A stretch of 62,128 bases of DNA, filler included, from Platydemus manokwari (lineage: Eukaryota), in assembly GCA_037951405.1 (NCBI GenBank). It is 5 parts of 5 records of this genome, joined end to end, with 100 filler letters (N's around TTAATTAATTAA, not from the genome) between each part and the next. Parts side by side here need not be neighbours in the genome. Positions count along the whole stretch, not along the records: positions 44,365 to 53,215 come from JBBMOY011339205.1; 4 more parts are not named here. One strand, given 5' to 3'. Every line of letters starts with the position of its first letter. Position 1 is the stretch's first letter. The notes under the pieces are model-generated. The model saw only the letters and a list, made by a program, of their open reading frames with translations. It did not search any database and was not told the DNA's origin. This document shows, piece by piece, positions 44,001 to 53,386 of the stretch. A program made the position numbers and the translations under genes.

Positions 44001-44655
44001 TCAGTGTGATAATGCAGCGAAGTCTGATTAGTGATTGTTTCTAAGTTTTCAATCATAAGACTTCAAGATTTAGAAATGGCTTTCTTGGGAAAATAAATAT
44101 ATTTCTACTTGTAATGTTTCATCTTATTTATCTGTATCGAATTTGATAATTTAGAAATCAATAATTACTTTTATTGTTTTGCCAGGGGTTTTCTTGAATT
44201 ATATGAGATAAAATAATGATAAATATTAATTTCAACTGGAAATGTGCTTTTAAATAATGGCAATNNNNNNNNNNNNNNNNNNNNNNNNNNNNNNNNNNNN
44301 NNNNNNNNTTAATTAATTAANNNNNNNNNNNNNNNNNNNNNNNNNNNNNNNNNNNNNNNNNNNNAATCACATTTGGTTCGTATTTTTTTTATTTATTTAC
44401 TAGGCTATATCATCTAGATTACTTGTAAATTATTCATTTAACATCATCTTAATTAATTTTAATATTCTCCTAATATCATCTGAAAATTTTCATTCTAATT
44501 TCATGAAATTCGCATTATCACATGAGCAAATGTTGTTAAATTTAACTGAATGGATTGGTGAGAAAACCTGTTCATAGAAATTTGTATTCTAACTCTAAGC
44601 TGGTGTGCATTTGTGATGTAAGTGGTAGTGATGAAAGAATTATTGCTTTGATAAG

Positions 44656-44778
44656 CTTTGATGTCTTTTGAAACTGTAAGCATTCACAGTTGTTGTTCAA
44701 TTGAGTGGCTTTGAATTATGAACTTTGATGTCTTTTGAAACTGTAAGCATTCACAATTCTTGTTCAATTGAGTGGCTT
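44656..44778. repeat. 67-bp tandem duplication
   Basis: ctttgatgtcttttgaaactgtaagcattcaca(g/a)tt(g/c)ttgttcaattgagtggctt starts at 44656 and again at 44723. Confidence 0.9.
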
Positions 44779-45085
44779 GTAACAAAAACCATTTTTCATT
44801 ATAGATTTATATAAGTTGAACCCATATATGAGGCTTATAAATTATTTTAATGTATTTCTACTTAATTTGGATAAATTTTTATAAACTTAGATAATTACAA
44901 TATTGTGCTAATATCATACTTTTTTGATCATCATATTGGTCAAATTAAATTAAATTTTACAATATGGGATCAAAACAAATTCCATTTCCTATAAAATATT
45001 GGTTGTTTTCATTTGACATCAAAAATTCCAATAATAAATACAAATAAAATTATAAAGTTAGAGTAATTTCAATTTATAATTTTAG

Positions 45086-47274
45086 TTGCACCAATCCAAC
45101 TAATAATTCAACCGGATTTTCTAAATTTCTACTTAAGATCAATAATTTTTAATGTATCGTGTGAACTTGAAAATACTAGCGTTATTGAAAAACATAAGCT
45201 GGTTGATTTAGAAATGGTTTCAAATAGCACTTTAGTGACACGTTTAGGAAATCTGATTTATAGAATGCCTGGGACTGACATAGGAACAGTCTGTTTTACA
45301 TGTGGTAATAACTTCATACCATACGTAAATAAATGTTATTGGTTTTATGGTGAGATGTTTAAAATTTAAATTAACTTTTAGTCCTATATTAATGCATAAC
45401 CTTTAAGACAAAGTCCTGAATGTCCACATTCAACCGAATTACACTAAAATTTACCTTCCAAAAAAGACGATGAACATTTCGTGTAATGTTGATCCAGCTG
45501 ATTTGGTCGATCGTAAATTTATAAAATATGTTATTTTTATTTTCAATAACAGCACAGTTTCAAAAGGAAATAAGAAATTAATTATTTTTGATGGCAGAAA
45601 AGTTGGTCGAATTTGCTTCTCTTGTGGCCATGCTTTAATAAACTTCACTATGAGATGCTACGATTATTATGGTATGAACTGAAATTATCAGATACCTTTA
45701 TTATTTAAGAGAATAACGTTCTTATTTATGTAGAAATCAATATAAGTATAAATGGAACTATAAGTAATTATGTGTAAGTAACTATATGAATAAAATTTTA
45801 ATATTAGAAATATTCGACAAAAGAATTATAATTTTTCAATATCAATAATATCAAAATATATTTTTATAAAAAACAAAAATCAATTATCTTTTGCTGAATC
45901 CTTATAATCCAGTCATAAATTCAAACAAAGCGCAACGTTAGAAGAATTATCAATAAAATTTTACCTTTTTGGCAAAAGAAACACAAGCATAATAAGTGAG
46001 ATTGAGCTTTCAAATTTTTCGCAGTATCAAAGAGTTTGAAAACCACAGCTCCAGTTAGTCATGTAACCGTGATATTTGTTCATTTTTCGTAAAATATTTT
46101 TAGCATAATTATTTTAAAAATTATTGGAATTTAATAACGATATTGTTAATAGTGTGCTAATTCTCTTATTATATATTTATCCATGTTTTTCTTTCAAGAT
46201 AAAAGTATAATAATAGTTGTGAAACCGGAATACTACAAATATTACTTTCCCAGCAAATTGTTTAAAATAAAATGCATTGTAACGCCTGAGGAAGTTATTG
46301 AAAAGAATCTGATATTGGGAATTGGATTCATTTTTAACAATTCGACATTCAACTTGTCAAACATTAGAGAAATAACTGTAAATCGCTCAGAAATGGGTAC
46401 CATTTGCGTCCAATGTGGTCATGTGATGCTGAATATTATTAATAGGTGCTACGAAAATTATGGTAAAGCTAATTTTAAATTCTTCTAAATTGTGCTATTT
46501 GTAGTGACATTGATTTATATAGCCAAAGTTGTATTAAATGTTTTTAAATAGTTAATCAATTTTGACATTATCAACATTCATAAGTGAATTTATAGCACAA
46601 CAGAAGCTAAAGATTTAGAAATATGCTTGTCATAGCTTATAGGGTTGATATATTTTATAATTTCGAATAAAAAATAGCTGATAAAACAAATTTGATTTAC
46701 CTTTTCTTGTTTTTTTAATTTTATATTTATATTATTTTTATCATTTTTCTTCATTTAAATGTCGATGAGTTTTGCTTAATAAAAACCAACCGATATTGAA
46801 AATATTGATAAAATTAATATTAAGTTAAAAGAGCTTGAAAAATTTAAAGTATCAGTGCTAGTTGATAATCGTCAATTCTCTATTTGTTGTAAGAGTTTAA
46901 TCGAAGAAATTTGAAATACATATAATTTAAATATATTGACTAGATAAACTAAAAATGTCTTCAGCGATAGATTATCAATTAATTTAAGTTTATAAAATTA
47001 TGTAGTATTTCTTTAATAGGAAACAAACCAAATATTACTATTCTACCTAATAATGAAGTGTACTTGCTACGTGTAAAAATGTACGTTTATTGTGATGTTT
47101 ATCCACCACCAAGTCTTCACTTGATAGGAAATTTGGCGTTTACCTTTGTAAATGCATCATTATTATATCGATCGGCGACAGTTATAATAACGGATGGTAC
47201 CGATAATAAAATGATTTGTTTTGAATGTGGAATTATCGATTTAACTATTGCCCGAAAATGTTATGAGCCACTTG
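45086..47274 (+). CDS. Extracellular protein with four tandem divergent Ig-like, four-Cys domains (one domain per exon); 5' and 3' exons unresolved
   Basis: Exons 45086-45349, 45408-45671, 46199-46462 (264 nt each) and 47020-47274 (255 nt) have AG/GT boundaries and are all phase 1-1 and open. Each encodes hydrophobic-x-P...C-x41/43-C-x2-C-G-x9-C-Y and an aligned N-glycosylation sequon (NST/NST/NST/NAS). Confidence 0.8.
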
Positions 47275-47949
47275 GTAATTTATTTATATTTTTATTATAT
47301 GTTACTATAATTGTAATTAAATATTATATTTTCATGAAATATTTTAAAATATTTTAATAAGTCATGACAAACGATTCATAAATAGGCATACTGTTAAGAA
47401 TAAATAAATCATAAGATTATATTTCATAAAAATACGGAGAATGAGAAAAGCTTCAAAAATATCACCTAAATTCAGTAAAAATTTGGAAATAGATGAAAAT
47501 ACAAGTGAAACACTTACATAAATCAACAACCAATCAGAATTCCCAATGTTGGTAGTTGTTACATTATCATTTATAATACTCATACTCATTCAGGGAAATG
47601 CATAATCAACAATTCACCAATCAAATATTAGTAAAATGTAACATCGTAAATTAAGATTTTGATCGATACAACTTTATCTTAACAAATAAAAAAATTGATA
47701 ATAAAAAACTTAAGAAAACTTTACCAATCTATATATAATAAGCATTTCAATTTTTAATTCACTTGGTGCATAGTGATTAAATTTAATCTGTGCACTTTTT
47801 CATATATATGTTCACCTAATTTTATCGTAACTTTCTATTTATTATTATAAGCTTTCAGTATCATTCAATGCTTTGTTGTTACAAGATTTATTCAATACAA
47901 ATTTGTTTTGATTATTGGATTGATTGTGACCTGGTTGGGTCTGAAAGCT

Positions 47950-49130
47950 TTGATTCGTGAGGTCAATTTTGCTTTTTCATTCATTCATCTCGGCTTTTCG
48001 TTTGGTTAGAATTGTTTGATTCTATTTTGTGTTAGATAAAATCTATCAAAACACTGGTCGAGTGAAATTGCCAGATTTTTGCAGAATGTTCAATATTTGA
48101 GATTGCGCATTCTTTGACCAGGTTTTGGATTTTATTCTTAGGCACGCCAAAATTGCTTCTGTTGAGGCCGGAACTGTACAAAGTGAGCCTATAATGCACG
48201 TGAAAAGCTCAATATTGAAATCTGGTTTTAATTAGGCTGGCTCATTCTTAAAATCGGTATAATGAATTATATTTTTGTTTGATTCCTCGAAGTTTTGTAC
48301 TGTGTCGATCGGACATTTCATGTCTACCAGGAAGGTCTTTTTTCGCTCTACGTCGGTAACCGATAAATCGACGCGCTATTTTCTGTCCGGTAACAGTAAG
48401 CACATTTAGTTCACTACTACAATTATTTTTTTTGATCGAAGACAGTCAACAATTTTGGTAAGGCATGCATCATGGCGAGCAGTTTGTAGCTTTTTCGGAT
48501 TTCAACCCTGTAGTGCATGTGCCATGGTTTCAGGGAAGCTATGGTAACGTCGGCACTTTTGACTTTTCTCATTTGTCTTCCAAGGCCATGCATTAATTGC
48601 TAGAGTATTTTTTCTAGCTGGGTGAATGAGCTTAAACTCAAAAGATTTCAGGTCACTACGAAAAATCATCTTATTAATTCGTGGAGATAGCTTAACTGTA
48701 TCTGCAATAAAATTATGCGTTTACTATCAAGCTATCTTGAAGAATAAGATTCCTGAATCAATTGGTGTCAAACAAGAGATAGTTGCTTTCGATTACGAGA
48801 ACCAAAGTTGTAAGTTCCGCAAGAAACAGATGTCATCCTCAAGTAAGTTTATCTTTAACAAATTCAAAAATCAGGCTAATTTTTTGAGTAATTTGAAAAT
48901 ATTTCAAAGCATTGATAACACGTATCCACCAAATCTTTTTAGAAGCAGAGTTTTCCATAGATTTTTTACCACTGATCCATTCAAAGCTTTCACCGATTGA
49001 TGGATTTGAGTTACGAAATCTTGTAGAAGAAACAAAGCAAAGTGAATCAGATATAATTCTCTTTGTCAGTGAACAATCAGAGTTTAAGCGATGGTTGAGT
49101 GTGATATTCATCAATTCACGGAGATAAGTT
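47950..49130 (-). mobile_element. 3' fragment of a NeSL/Utopia-like (R2 superfamily) non-LTR retrotransposon with restriction-like endonuclease
   Basis: Minus strand reads EFKLIHPARKNTL (cf. WRFIHRARLN), a CCHC knuckle remnant KCRRY...ETMAHALQG*...TARHD, then the RLE core RVDL...FLVDMKCPID...F...IIGSL. Upstream, LNSDC...IWWIRV resembles the post-RT region. Stops and frameshifts are present. Confidence 0.85.
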
Positions 49131-52100
49131 TTATCATTGTTATGTAGCTATATCCTGTTTTCTAGATTTTAGCCTGGTAATTGATGAAGTACGGGGAACG
49201 AGAATATTAGCCTATAGAAAAGCGCATAGTGAACATTTTCGTTCCTGTGAAAACCTGACAAAAGTTTGACTACAAAAACCCAGAATTTCGGACTTCGATT
49301 TTCAAAAGAGATATTTTTATGTTTGAAATAAATCTTTGCACGTTCAGTGATTATATCTAACGATACATTTAACTGTTTCCACGGCTATTGCGTAATTTAT
49401 GATTTGAACCCAGCTCAATCAAACTATAAATAATCAATAAATTAACAATAAAATTCGTGTCACCCCGTGTTTTCCCGGGAACATTGGTCTTAACCATTTT
49501 TAAATCACTAGTTACACATCAAGTCTCTTACAGTCGTTGACATTGAAGTCATCTTGTCTAAAATCTGTTCCATATAATTAGAATCACAAACAATAAAAAT
49601 ATAATCAATAAATATCATTATCATAAACCCCCATCTCTAATTGGTTCTAAATTGCCAGTATTCAATTTTATTAATCGATTATTTTTTCTCTTCATTATGA
49701 TATTCATTGCAATTGTTGGCCATTACATTTTATTGGTGTCATTATTTATTCATTCATTTTATTTATAAATCAAAATGTTTTAGCACCATTAGTGGAGTCA
49801 CATACTTATTTAAAACCTTTATTTATATATTTTATCGCGCATTTACAATTCAAGCTCAGAAAATACATTTTATTGTCAAATTCCTGATGATATCTTTACA
49901 CTTAAATAAAATATATCTGAAAATCCCAGAAAACATAAGAACACTGTGCAGACAATGACGATTTTAACGCTTGACTGGAAATGCTGGGAAATTTTTGTGA
50001 ATGGGAGTATAATATCATATTGGATTGTGACATCGGTAGTCATTTCATACATGCCAGCTTCTGATAATTCAGTGAATTATGGGTTGAGAAAATTATTGCG
50101 ACAATTTTGATTGGCTAATTTTTTTGCACATAGTTCATGGGCTTGGATTCAAATTTGATCCTTTGAGAACTTTTTCTCACAATTTTTTAAGTTGAAATGC
50201 TTGCAAATTTCCGCAGAGGTAGTCAGCTTTTAGAGCTAATCTGTTTATGCTTCTGGATTCTTTTTGAGCTCTGGCAACGTGTCTTGTTTGTTGTTCTTAC
50301 CTGTTCTTGCTGTTCTTCTTTCGAGACATGGTGATTCAATACTTTGAACAAAGGCATTTGTCGGTTGGCTAACTTTCGCATTGTTCCTCGGCTTTCCTTT
50401 GAGTACCTTTGTCCGAGAGCCTCAATGAAGCCGTATGGGAGTAAACAGAGACCCAACGCTGAAATCAGTCGGAGGTGATTATCATTAAATGTTAGAATTG
50501 GCACTAGATAGCACATAAACATAGAGTCTGTGATAGCAATATTTGAGTAACCGCAGCAATAGTCATTGTATTGTTAATTTCTTGCTCTGGGATGAGTGTG
50601 AATAAGATTTCACGTGCTTTGATCTGACTCCAAAGATCTTGTAGCGTTTTGTAAATATGTGGCCCAAATAATATAAATACTATTTAGTTATAAATATACT
50701 AATAGCAACTGAGTTTCCTGAAAAATGTATTAACTGGAAATTCAAAATACAAAGGCAAATCACAAGACAACAAATATATCGATATACAATTTAGTTAGTG
50801 TGCAACAACGAACCGGTGATGTATTCTACTTAACCAGAGAGACCGATCCACAGGACAGTGACTAACCATGTAATGGAGAAAAACTTAGTAAAAAGTACCG
50901 GAACTAAAACGAAGAGCTGATTATTAAATACCGAATCGTTTGATACTGTATGTGGATGTAGAGCAATGTACACCTTTTAATTACAGCGATATGAATCCAC
51001 TGCAGGCGAGCGTTCTGCAGTTTTTCTCGTTTTTGAGTTGATTTTTGTGAGTTCACTTTGCTGGCTTCTGTTCTGAGTGACTAATTTTGTGCAGATGAAT
51101 GTTTTGACCACTATTTGTCGATTGAGTCGTGTATTTATACACTGTGTTTCTGCCACTTCAATTCTTTAAATTCTAAACTTAGGTTTTGATTTTCGTTTAA
51201 ATTCAGTTTGCATATTTATTTAATTCTATATTTAGAGTTGCTGTTATTTATGTAATTATTCTATTCTATTTATGTGGACTTGTTATTTTAGTTCCATATT
51301 TGTAATTATAGATTCTATTTTTGTATTTATTGATTCTATTTAATAATTATATTATGACTCATTGATCGCCTGTTGTAAATTGTCTTTCTCCGGGTTAACT
51401 CTGGGTGGTTAGATTATTGGATCCCAACATTGGATCCCAACAGTATAGAGATATTGATTTGAATCGGAATTCGCTATTTAGCTAAAAAATTATACTCTAA
51501 ATAACTCTAATCATTTATTTTTCTAACATAAGGCTTTGATGAATAAACAAGCTCAATGTAGAGTCCAAGAAACTCAAAGATTTCGAAAACAAAATCGAAG
51601 TTGTGCTCAAAATCTTGATCAATAATTTGCAGAAAATTCTCTTTGTAGTTTGGTTTTAGCAAAAAAGGATTTATAATTGATAAATAAAAATTTATGAGAT
51701 AAAACTAATCTGGTAATGATGTATAGATAATCGATAAATGATAGTTTGATTTAACTAAGTCGTGATCGACATTTGATTAGAAGTTAATCTATACTAATAC
51801 AATCTATACTAATATAATTTATACAAAACAATCAATAAATTATTTATTAGATTTATATTTGTAAATCAATGCCTTGCATTCTATACAAATATATCTAAAA
51901 ATCATTAAACTAAATATATTTATAATTGATTTAAAATTTTAATTATAAAAAATATCGATTTGTGTTTAAATCAATCATTTCAATGCTTCCATAAATATTT
52001 ATTTTTCAAATAATAAGGAAAAGATTACCCAATTTTATTAATAAATTATTACGTATTGCCTTTGTTATAAACATTATTGATTAAACTGATTCGAATTTCT

Positions 52101-52213
52101 TTCAAATTGTAAGTGTGAAAAATTTTTGCATTACTATTTCAGTTAACAGTTATGAAAATCGTTGTTAAACATGATTTTATTCTCGAAAATAATTAACTAT
52201 AATCCTTTTCAAG

Positions 52214-53002
52214 GTGATGGAAAGCCACCAGTACAATGACAATTATGATGACGATCAACAGAATCAAAGACGGGAACGAAAGAAGAAACGCAATCGTAAA
52301 CCGAGAGAGGAAAATTATAATGACGAAGAGAATTATCATGATTTCAACAGTCCGAATTATGAACAAGCATCTTCACCGCTGACGGCATTTCCTCGGAAAT
52401 CGGAAGAAGAAAATTTTGACCCGTCGCAAGCACCGAAACGGAAACATCGATCGAAACCGAAAACGAAACGAGAAGAAGAATATTCGGAAGATCCAAACCC
52501 ACATCGGAGTGGATATCATGATGAAAGGTTTAACTCGCCAGAACCAAGTTATGAAAATGAATTTGAAGAGAGGAAACCTCGTAAGGAAAGAAAGAAGAAA
52601 TCACGAGACGTCCACATGGATGAGCCGGCTTCAGAAGATCCTTATTTGAATATTCAGTCACCTAATGGTCACAAAGATAATAATTATCCATTCGAAGATC
52701 CAAGTGAATCAATTCAATTGGAAGATGATTCGCAATATCAAGATGATGAGATGGCTCGATCAGATGATGGCGCTCTCGATCACCAAGATGGTTCAGCGAG
52801 AGCCGGCGACAAACCAAAGAAAAAGAGCGGTGGATTCATGAAGATATTTGCATCATTTAAGAAGAAAAACAAAGCTAAAAATGCCGATACAAGCTTCAAT
52901 GGCAAACAATGGCAATCGAATCCAGAAATATTCAATCCAGCATATGACAGCCAACCGGGCACGCTTGAGAAATCAAGTTGGGATTTTTGGAATTTTTATT
53001 GA
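52214..53002 (+). CDS. Highly charged, intrinsically disordered protein (single large or terminal exon), family unknown
   Basis: Acceptor ccttttcaag at 52213, ATG at 52217, then a 262-codon open GC-enriched frame with alternating acidic and basic blocks, ending FNPAYDSQPGTLEKSSWDFWNFY*. Confidence 0.75.
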   Translation: MMESHQYNDNYDDDQQNQRRERKKKRNRKPREENYNDEENYHDFNSPNYEQASSPLTAFPRKSEEENFDPSQAPKRKHRSKPKTKREEEYSEDPNPHRSGYHDERFNSPEPSYENEFEERKPRKERKKKSRDVHMDEPASEDPYLNIQSPNGHKDNNYPFEDPSESIQLEDDSQYQDDEMARSDDGALDHQDGSARAGDKPKKKSGGFMKIFASFKKKNKAKNADTSFNGKQWQSNPEIFNPAYDSQPGTLEKSSWDFWNFY

Positions 53003-53386
53003 AAAATATTTTTATATATCGATTAAAATGAATTTGAAATTTTATTTTTAATAATTAGTTATTTAATTAATTAATTAATTTTAATTAAAAATCTATTTTT
53101 AACTGACTATATTATTTTATAATTATTTTATAAAAATTTTATTGATTTTTAATTATTAATAATTTTATTATTCAGTGGAATTTTATTAAATTTAATAAAT
53201 AATATATTTGATTAANNNNNNNNNNNNNNNNNNNNNNNNNNNNNNNNNNNNNNNNNNNNTTAATTAATTAANNNNNNNNNNNNNNNNNNNNNNNNNNNNN
53301 NNNNNNNNNNNNNNNATAAATTATACAATAAATTAATTATGTATTTTTTCATATAAATAAATTATTTTTTATTTTATAATAAAGAT

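What the first reader, a model, noticed from the sequence alone, without database searches (positions are those of the whole stretch)
45086..47521. Exon-per-domain array of a non-canonical four-cysteine Ig-like module
Seen: four symmetric phase-1 exons, three exactly 264 nt. They are divergent in sequence yet keep C-x41/43-C-x2-C-G-x9-C-Y, an N-terminal hydrophobic-x-P strand and an aligned N-glycan sequon. Established: one-domain-per-exon phase 1-1 architecture, and a B-strand Cys about 45 residues before an F-strand aromatic-x-Cys, are typical of IgSF proteins. Inference: these are Ig-like domains that lack the C-strand Trp, carry Phe/Val at the tyrosine-corner position and have an extra F-G strand disulfide. 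That would suggest a fast-evolving, lineage-specific cell-surface or secreted family (recognition, adhesion or immunity). Symmetric exons also allow in-frame exon skipping. A basic, tail-like frame RLYFIKIRRMRKASK...ETLT* lies at 47414-47521, but no clean TM exon was found. Direct splicing to 47416 would instead give a secreted form ending EPLDYIS*.
Basis: partly seen in the sequence, partly recalled or inferred. Interest (0 to 1): 0.8.

Follow-up and report, generated by a model that had tools for sequence, protein, structure and literature searches.

The report
Orphan four-cysteine Ig-like exon array
Four neighbouring exons each encode one copy of a roughly 87-residue, four-cysteine, glycosylated module that is predicted to fold like an immunoglobulin domain. 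The module belongs to a small unnamed family seen otherwise only in a few AT-rich environmental contigs. Expression, the ends of the gene and its function remain untested.

Summary
Exons at 45086-45349, 45408-45671, 46199-46462 (264 nt each) and 47020-47274 (255 nt) are open, bounded by AG/GT, and all phase 1-1. They share P9, Y15, C25, C69-x2-C72-G73, C83-Y84 and an aligned N-x-S/T sequon.

This is not chance: four stop-free stretches against 0.07 expected. A profile of the repeats finds nine unnamed single-exon relatives among 1.84 billion proteins (E 2e-24 to 3e-7). These relatives keep the same exon phase and splice positions. In one relative the exons differ about six times less than the flanking DNA between strains, which indicates purifying selection.

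Two AlphaFold models (pLDDT 74 and 79) give a seven-strand beta-sandwich. The nearest solved structures are Ig domains of ICAM, nectin-like, PVR and CEACAM proteins (Z 7.3-8.5). No Ig sequence model matches any of 14 members, even at E<=1.

The Ig-like fold is therefore supported, while homology to the immunoglobulin superfamily and the disulfide pattern stay inferred. No signal-peptide or transmembrane exon lies in the piece. No RNA data could be obtained.

In relatives, cassettes of two or three such exons form 1.05-1.3 kb units that close on themselves in independent assemblies, which suggests tandem amplification.

The parts
45086..45349 (+). Exon E1, 264 nt, phase 1-1, one four-Cys module (the most divergent copy)
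   Evidence: AG|..|GTGAG boundaries and open frame. Profile score 96.7 bits, though the profile includes this copy. All four Cys and the NST sequon are present. It sits on a long branch in the family tree.
45350..45407 (+). Intron 1, 58 nt, GT..AG
   Evidence: Relatives have introns of 46-54 nt at the same positions.
45408..45671 (+). Exon E2, 264 nt, phase 1-1, one module
   Evidence: AF2 model m40a8239d28d8 has pLDDT 73.9 and is all-beta. Its nearest structures are ICAM-5, ICAM-3 and ICAM-2 D1 at Z 8.0-8.5.
46199..46462 (+). Exon E3, 264 nt, phase 1-1, one module (closest to the family consensus)
   Evidence: It is 48% identical to P0001/L009, and blastn similarity to L009 is confined to the exon. 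AF2 model m69e1a845fff1 has pLDDT 79.2. Its nearest structures are nectin-like-4 D3, PVR D3 and CEACAM at Z 7.3-7.6.
47020..47274 (+). Exon E4, 255 nt, phase 1-1, one module that is 3 residues shorter
   Evidence: It shares its two deletions and the C-terminal x-L ending with L008 domain 1, to which it is 37% identical.
47416..47430 (+).
   Evidence: The arithmetic is right. The acceptor context scores 2.6 against 5.6-10.6 for family acceptors and ranks 56 of 225 AGs.
47538..47605 (+). Alternative candidate terminal exon, read in phase 1 as E-F-P followed by a 16-residue hydrophobic stretch, QGNA and a stop; weak
   Evidence: It contains the most hydrophobic open segment near the array, with a 17-residue Kyte-Doolittle mean of 2.95. 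The acceptor scores only 2.1 and ranks 70 of 225. There is no conservation test and no RNA.
52217..53002 (+). Neighbouring gene, probably separate: a 261-aa charged, low-complexity ORF
   Evidence: It is 68% identical to P0015 on L013, from the same sample as P0001. The ATG is conserved, and a conserved non-coding TATA-like block lies at about 51960-52025, roughly 190 nt upstream. The ORF starts in phase 0, which cannot join the phase-1 end of E4 directly.

Best explanation
The four exons are real coding exons of a gene that is incomplete in this piece. The gene would encode an extracellular, N-glycosylated protein built as a string of small beta-sandwich (Ig-like) modules, one module per phase 1-1 exon.

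Each module is probably pinned by two disulfides. One would be a cross-sheet bond between the B-strand Cys25 and one of the F-strand cysteines, most likely Cys72, which follows an aromatic-x spacing. The other would be a bond within the F-G hairpin, Cys69 to Cys83.

Because all exons are symmetric, modules can be duplicated, lost or skipped without breaking the frame. In this window the copies are old and divergent. In related organisms, cassettes of two or three modules have been amplified as near-identical 1.05-1.3 kb units.

The likeliest role is a secreted or surface-bound adhesion, recognition or coat protein of a narrow, AT-rich, presumably invertebrate lineage.

What is shown: the exon structure, the paralogy, the existence and constraint of the family, and the predicted fold class. 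What is inferred: the disulfide pairing, the extracellular location (from the conserved Cys and the sequon) and the function.
For: - Exon boundaries, phases and shared motif.
- The open frames are far beyond chance.
- Nine relatives at E 2e-24 to 3e-7 among 1.84e9 proteins. All are single-exon ORF fragments on contigs of 26-30% GC.
- Every relative has GT at the same phase-1 position after C-Y/F-x3, and an AG 255-270 nt upstream.
- L001 against L002 and L012: 1.5% differences in exons against 8.5-9.8% outside them, with pN/pS 0.28-0.46.
- AF2 models with pLDDT 73.9 and 79.2 have strands at about 4-9, 21-28, 42-44, 51-54, 57-60, 68-74 and 77-86.
- The nearest structures are Ig domains of cell-surface proteins.
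- Language-model neighbours lean towards Dscam-like and C2-set proteins, but weakly (0.78-0.84).
- The sequon is conserved in 13 of 14 members.
- L008, L014 and L015 come from three assemblers, with end overlaps of 119, 55 and 30 nt. All three close on the same 1052-bp cycle holding three in-frame exons. L012 crosses the junction of the 1298-bp L001 cycle.
Against: - There is no RNA evidence.
- No multi-domain, spliced protein of this family exists in the 15-billion-protein collection.
- There is no signal-peptide exon in the 720 nt upstream.
- No downstream exon has a family-like acceptor. A decayed retroelement-like stretch follows the array, so the local gene may be truncated.
- E1 and E4 sit on long branches, which may mean relaxed constraint.
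- No Ig sequence model matches.
- Structural Z values of 7-8.5 lie within the range that the tool says can reflect only a common arrangement.
Confidence: 0.62

Rival explanations
1. The fold class is the same but there is no shared ancestry with the immunoglobulin superfamily. The module would be an independent small beta-sandwich, comparable to bacterial or phage Ig-like, E-set or fn3-like domains, that merely resembles Ig. This rival concerns ancestry only and is compatible with the architecture described above.
For: - No Pfam Ig family hits any of 14 members at E<=1, and there is no sequence hit in the PDB.
- Phage tail and glycosidase Ig-like domains tie with animal Ig domains in Z.
- The ESM Atlas structural neighbours are mainly bacterial Big_2-containing proteins.
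- The D-x-G-x-Y-x-C motif and the C-strand Trp are absent.
Against: - One domain per phase 1-1 exon, and a B-strand Cys 44-47 residues before an aromatic-x-Cys in strand F, are classic IgSF traits. This rests on established knowledge.
- One member has Trp at the C-strand position.
- The best-ranked hits in both models are animal cell-surface Ig domains.
Confidence: 0.3
2. In this genome the array is a gene remnant. The four exons are still open, but the gene has lost its 3' end, and perhaps its 5' end, for instance through the retroelement insertion downstream. It would no longer be expressed as a functional protein.
For: - No acceptable downstream exon was found and no signal-peptide exon.
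- Retroelement-like ORF debris lies on the minus strand from about 47900 to 51400, with raised GC.
- E1 and E4 have long terminal branches.
- No RNA holder was found.
Against: - All four frames, all eight splice sites and all sixteen cysteines are intact, in 25% GC DNA where a stop is expected about every 11 codons.
- The piece is only 8.85 kb, so the missing ends may simply lie outside it or behind the insertion.
Confidence: 0.2
3. The exons are mutually exclusive alternatives, as in the Dscam exon clusters. Only one would be included per transcript, giving variant forms of a single Ig-like domain.
For: - The exons are tandem, of the same size, the same phase and the same strand, and each encodes a whole domain.
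- Some inter-exon introns are very short: 58 nt here and 46-54 nt in relatives.
Against: - Neighbouring exons are only 21-37% identical, far lower than typical alternative-exon clusters. That comparison rests on established knowledge.
- No docking or selector complementarity was found beyond weak AT-rich inverted repeats.
- Introns of about 50 nt appear to be normal for these genomes.
- The amplified cassettes of 2-3 different modules in relatives look like repeated protein units.
Confidence: 0.06
4. The open frames are accidental features of a repeated, non-coding (satellite-like) sequence.
For: In relatives the units behave like tandem repeats or circles in assemblies.
Against: - The open frames are far beyond chance.
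- The four Cys, Pro9 and the sequon persist at 20-48% identity.
- Constraint is about six times stronger in exons than in flanks.
- The splice sites are conserved in phase.
Confidence: 0.01

Closest known systems
C2/I-set Ig domains of cell-adhesion molecules (nectin and nectin-like D3, PVR D3, CEACAM, MDGA1)
   Same: - The predicted seven-strand sandwich superposes over 78-82 of 87 residues, at rmsd 2.4-2.8 and Z 7.3-8.0.
- A Cys sits in strand B and an aromatic-x-Cys in strand F.
- One domain is encoded per phase 1-1 exon.
- The modules carry an N-glycan sequon.
   Different: - Sequence identity is 4-14%.
- No Ig HMM hit was found.
- Phe stands in place of the C-strand Trp.
- There is no D-x-G-x-Y motif.
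- There is an extra Cys pair (C69 and C83).
- The module is only about 87 residues long.
ICAM-family domain 1 (ICAM-1, -2, -3, -5)
   Same: These are the best structural matches for the E2 model: Z 8.0-8.5, rmsd 2.4-2.6 over 78-79 residues. From my own knowledge, ICAM D1 is also a small Ig domain of about 85 residues with a second disulfide.
   Different: - From my own knowledge, the second ICAM disulfide links strands B and F again, in a C-x3-C...C-x3-C pattern. Here the extra pair lies in strands F and G.
- For the E3 model the ICAM matches drop to Z 6.5-6.8, so the resemblance is not specific.
Hydractinia Alr allorecognition proteins (non-canonical IgSF; PMC9546547)
   Same: - Their Ig-like domains are invisible to ordinary sequence models and were recognised through structure prediction.
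- Each domain is encoded by a single exon.
- Conserved disulfides link neighbouring strands within one sheet.
- The family is lineage-restricted and divergent.
   Different: - Alr domains lack the B-F cysteines, whereas this family keeps a B and an F cysteine.
- Alr genes have proven transcripts, transmembrane helices and ITAM/ITIM tails, none of which is shown here.
- No sequence relation was found. The exhaustive profile search returned no named protein.
Brachionus mate-recognition protein repeats (MMR-A and MMR-B; PMC2746195)
   Same: - The repeat unit is 87-92 residues.
- Near-identical tandem units suggest concerted evolution, as in the L001 and L008 cycles.
- The product is a surface glycoprotein of an AT-rich aquatic invertebrate.
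   Different: - MMR genes have no introns and their repeats abut head to tail.
- They are predicted to be alpha-helical.
- Their asparagines are not in N-x-T.
- The family profile found no named protein.
This lead was rejected.
Dscam-type clusters of alternative Ig-domain exons
   Same: Both are tandem arrays of same-size symmetric exons, each encoding an Ig-like domain or half of one.
   Different: Identity between neighbours is much lower here. No selector or docking elements were found. Splicing was not tested.

Membership tests
Immunoglobulin superfamily (Pfam clan Ig, I-set/C2-set) | Greek-key beta-sandwich of 7-9 strands in two sheets | tested here: met
   Two AF2 models (pLDDT 73.9 and 79.2) have seven strands. 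All top structural neighbours are Ig-like sandwiches. This is a prediction, not an experimental structure.
Immunoglobulin superfamily (Pfam clan Ig, I-set/C2-set) | Significant match to an Ig-family sequence profile | tested here: not met
   No ig, I-set, V-set, C2-set or Ig_2/3 hit in any of 14 members at E<=1. The profile search of PDB sequences returned nothing relevant. HHpred-level profile-profile comparison was not available.
Immunoglobulin superfamily (Pfam clan Ig, I-set/C2-set) | Disulfide between strands B and F | tested here: inconclusive
   Invariant Cys25 lies in predicted strand B, and Cys69 and Cys72 in strand F.
Immunoglobulin superfamily (Pfam clan Ig, I-set/C2-set) | C-strand Trp packing on the disulfide | tested here: not met
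   The aligned position in predicted strand C (residue 43) holds Phe, Leu or Met in 13 of 14 members and Trp only in P0009.
Immunoglobulin superfamily (Pfam clan Ig, I-set/C2-set) | Tyrosine corner, D-x-G/A-x-Y-x-C in strand F | tested here: not met
   The motif here is G-T/K-I-C-F/V-x-C-G. Phe or Val stands two residues before Cys72, there is no Asp at -6, and Ile rather than Gly or Ala is at -4.
Immunoglobulin superfamily (Pfam clan Ig, I-set/C2-set) | One domain per exon with phase 1-1 introns (typical of the family, not defining) | tested here: met
   This holds for all four window exons and eleven exons in relatives.
Brachionus MMR mate-recognition repeats | Intronless gene with head-to-tail, near-identical, alpha-helical repeats | tested here: not met
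   Here every repeat is separated by an intron, the repeats are 21-37% identical, and they are predicted all-beta.
Dscam-like mutually exclusive exon cluster | Only one exon of the cluster is included per mRNA, with docking and selector RNA pairing | not testable with these tools
The inverted-repeat scan shows only weak AT-rich pairs.

The most novel reading that the evidence does not exclude
The module defines a previously undescribed, fast-diversifying recognition family. Its genes would grow by amplifying cassettes of two or three Ig-like exons into long, concertedly evolving tandem arrays, seen as the 1052-bp and 1298-bp self-closing units in relatives. That would make it a surface 'barcode' protein used for mate, self/non-self or host recognition in a little-studied invertebrate lineage, possibly with exon skipping or exclusive splicing generating isoform diversity.
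Probability: 0.1. Interest if true: 0.7.

Novelty: new variant of a known kind. Interest (0 to 1): 0.4.

Why it matters
If expressed, this adds a sequence-orphan branch to the Ig-like fold. It keeps a B/F cysteine pair but swaps the other hallmark residues for an extra F-G cysteine pair. It is another case, after the Hydractinia Alr genes, where surface-protein families of non-model invertebrates are invisible to profile databases.

The self-closing two- and three-exon cassettes in relatives point to an exon-level amplification mechanism that could change a surface protein's length quickly.

The practical value is modest. It gives a seed alignment and splice-phase signature for annotating this family in new genomes of the lineage.

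Tried and rejected
- **Pfam.** Scans of the four modules and of all 14 family members found only scattered single hits (DUF7335, Herpes_IR6 and others) at E 0.02-0.07. None recurred, so they were rejected as noise.
- **PDB by sequence.** Nothing relevant.
- **Word-indexed protein search with the family alignment.** It returned only three members that were already known.
- **Metagenome scans.** Two scans, with E3+P0001 and with the neighbouring ORF+P0015, confirmed no locus.
- **Brachionus MMR lead.** Rejected after reading the paper.
- **P0010.** This 504-aa coiled-coil-like protein hit at E 1e-5 with partial matches to profile positions 18-61. I treat it as a false positive.
- **Signal-peptide exon.** In 44365-45085 the only ATG exon with a phase-1 GTGAG donor (44503-44557) is not hydrophobic.
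- **Transmembrane or terminal exon.** The hydrophobic candidates have poor acceptors or the wrong phase.
- **The 261-aa ORF as a cytoplasmic tail of this gene.** Judged unlikely, because it has a conserved ATG and a conserved non-coding upstream block.
- **Taxon.** Sample accessions were found in no paper. Rfam found nothing in 47700-53215. The retroelement debris has no Pfam hit.
- From then on those places were sent to no search tool and I worked beside them.
Full report
**Scope.** Only 44365-53215 is genome. That was the only read-laying run allowed, and the one run that holds the stretch is not on record as RNA. Splicing and expression therefore could not be tested.

**Observation.** The sequence contains four + strand exons:
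- E1: 45086-45349, 264 nt
- E2: 45408-45671, 264 nt
- E3: 46199-46462, 264 nt
- E4: 47020-47274, 255 nt

Each follows a T-rich ...AG and is followed by GT (GTGAG, GTATG, GTAAA, GTAAT). Each is open when read from its third base and leaves one base over, which is phase 1-1. The introns are 58, 527 and 557 nt.

The four products align without difficulty. Invariant residues are P9, Y15, C25, C69, C72, G73, C83 and Y84. Identity is 21-37%.

In DNA of about 25% GC, four stop-free stretches of at least 85 codons on one strand are not chance. Shuffles give a mean of 0.07 and never more than 2 in 2000, and the opposite strand has none. A six-frame profile scan finds no further or degenerate copies in the piece.

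**A real family under constraint.** A profile of the four repeats was searched exhaustively against 1.84 billion representative proteins. It found ten hits. Nine are convincing (E 2e-24 to 3e-7). The tenth is a coiled-coil-like protein matched only over part of the profile, and I discount it.

All nine are unnamed ORF fragments of 79-164 aa. They lie on contigs of 0.6-1.4 kb and 26-30% GC, from ENA, JGI and Logan assemblies of many different samples. None is a multi-domain protein, so the collection holds no spliced transcript of the family.

On these contigs the modules again sit in tandem, two on L001, L002 and L012 and three on L008. Every one has GT exactly one base after the C-Y/F-x3 codons, and a phase-compatible AG 255-270 nt upstream. 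The introns are 46-54 nt.

Between L001 and its close variants L002 and L012, the exons differ at 1.5% of sites, against 8.5-9.8% for the surrounding DNA. pN/pS is 0.28-0.46, on few changes. This is the strongest available evidence that the modules are functional coding sequence, at least in relatives.

The window's E3 matches L009 at the DNA level only inside the exon.

**Fold.** Two AlphaFold2 runs were made. E2 with 13 sequences gave pLDDT 73.9 and pTM 0.63. E3 with 14 sequences gave pLDDT 79.2 and pTM 0.67. Both give an all-beta domain with strands at about 4-9, 21-28, 42-44, (51-54), 57-60, 68-74 and 77-86.

The exhaustive structural search puts Ig domains on top:
- E2 model: ICAM-5, ICAM-3 and ICAM-2 D1 at Z 8.0-8.5, and nectin-like-4 D3 at Z 8.0.
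- E3 model: nectin-like-4 D3 at 7.6, PVR D3 at 7.4, and CEACAM at 7.3.

Foldseek's best E-values are only 6e-3 and 2e-2. Phage-tail and glycosidase Ig-like domains tie in Z. The tool warns that Z below about 8 can reflect a common arrangement.

Homology to the IgSF proper is not demonstrated:
- No Pfam Ig model hits any of 14 members, even at E<=1.
- The profile finds nothing relevant among PDB sequences.
- The C-strand Trp is Phe, Leu or Met in 13 of 14 members, with Trp in P0009 only.
- The D-x-G-x-Y-x-C motif is replaced by G-T/K-I-C-F/V-x-C-G.

The cysteines fall in predicted strands B (C25), F (C69, C72) and G (C83). The pairing C25-C72 plus C69-C83 is a reasonable inference from the aromatic-x-Cys spacing and the hairpin register. 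I had no coordinates to check it.

**Gene ends.** Upstream (44365-45085), the only ATG exon ending in a phase-1 GTGAG donor is 44503-44557. It encodes a non-hydrophobic 18-mer, so it is not a signal peptide. The 5' end probably lies beyond the edge of the piece.

Downstream, I scored every AG against a small matrix built from the eleven family acceptors, which themselves score 5.6-10.6.
- A site at 47538 would add E-F-P, a 16-residue hydrophobic stretch, QGNA and a stop. It scores 2.1.
- The basic 'tail-like' frame at 47414-47521 has no phase-compatible acceptor.

None of these is convincing, so the 3' end is unresolved.

From about 47900 to 51400, GC rises to 0.32-0.40. The minus strand there carries frame-shifted ORF debris that resembles the C-terminal part of non-LTR retroelement proteins. 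That resemblance is my own reading, and Pfam gives no hit. The element may separate the array from its last exons, or it may have truncated the gene.

**Neighbouring ORF.** The ORF at 52217-53002 encodes 261 aa and is charged and low in complexity. It is 68% identical to P0015 on L013, which comes from the same sample as the E3-like P0001. Three observations argue that it is a separate downstream gene rather than a cytoplasmic tail of the array gene:
- Its ATG is conserved.
- Both species have stops upstream in frame.
- A block at about 51960-52025 is about 85% conserved, contains CATAAATATTTA, and is closed in all frames in at least one species.

**Relatives amplify cassettes.** L008, L014 and L015 come from three samples and three assemblers. 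They are circular permutations of one 1052-bp sequence and are 99.4-99.8% identical. The ends of each contig overlap by 119, 55 or 30 nt, about the assembler's word length. The unit holds three different modules (258+261+267 nt) and three introns (54, 50, 162 nt), all in frame.

L001 closes on a 1298-bp unit with two modules, and the independent contig L012 runs across its junction.

The simplest reading is a tandem array of near-identical cassettes. That would be a long repeat protein kept homogeneous by recent amplification or concerted evolution. A circular molecule cannot be excluded from assemblies alone. The window itself shows only old, divergent copies.

**Comparison with known systems.**
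- The architecture (one Ig-like domain per symmetric phase-1 exon, glycosylated and disulfide-bonded) is the classic plan of IgSF surface proteins.
- The closest conceptual precedent is the Hydractinia Alr family. It is sequence-orphan, was recognised as V-set and I-set only through structure prediction, has one domain per exon, and has unusual in-sheet disulfides (PMC9546547). Alr domains lack the B-F cysteines and have proven transcripts and tails.
- I tested and rejected the Brachionus mate-recognition MMR repeats. They have the same unit length and concerted evolution, but they are intronless, abut head to tail, and are predicted helical (PMC2746195).
- A Dscam-like cluster of mutually exclusive exons is formally possible but unlikely, given 21-37% identity and no selector-like complementarity.

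**Verdict.**
These are real, constrained, lineage-restricted Ig-like modules with a non-canonical residue pattern.
- IgSF homology, the disulfide topology, fast evolution, expression, skipping, and both proposed 3' ends remain unproven or weak.
- I file it as a new variant of a known kind, of moderate interest.
- The source organism was not identified. It has AT-rich DNA, GT-AG introns of about 50-560 nt and retroelement debris, all consistent with an invertebrate animal.

Noticed in passing
window 52217-53002 (+), with upstream block about 51960-52025: A conserved 261-aa charged, low-complexity ORF, 68% identical to P0015 on L013. The best-conserved part is C-terminal: a basic K-K-K-S-G-G-F-M-K-I-F-A-S-F-K-K-K stretch, an N-P-A-Y motif, and a D-P-Y-L-N-I motif further upstream. 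A non-coding TATA-like block about 85% conserved lies roughly 190 nt upstream. There is no Pfam or Atlas match, so this is an unnamed gene.
   Followed up: partly
L013 about 299-301, against window 52244-52246: The relative's copy of that ORF has an in-frame TAG where the window has TAT (Tyr), nine codons after the conserved ATG. The gene caller therefore started P0015 at a later Met. This could be a sequencing error in a low-coverage contig, a real nonsense allele, or a sign of stop-codon reassignment. A single case cannot decide.
   Followed up: no
window about 47900-51400, mainly the minus strand (for example 48049-48375): A stretch of raised GC (0.32-0.40, against about 0.25 around it) carries frame-shifted ORF fragments on the minus strand that look like the tail of a non-LTR retroelement protein. 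Pfam gives no hit and no terminal repeats were found. It sits between the exon array and the next gene.
   Followed up: partly
window 44651-44711 and 44718-44778: A tandem direct repeat of 61 nt, 93% identical and spaced 67 nt apart, lies about 300 nt upstream of E1. Its meaning is unknown.
   Followed up: no
L008, L014, L015 (1052-bp unit); L001, L012 (1298-bp unit): Contigs from different samples and assemblers close on themselves, with end overlaps equal to the assembler's word size. They carry three or two in-frame family exons. These are tandemly amplified exon cassettes, or less likely circles, in relatives found in at least a dozen environmental data sets.
   Followed up: yes
The places lie in the AT-rich stretch just after E4 and were kept out of all later searches.
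   Followed up: no
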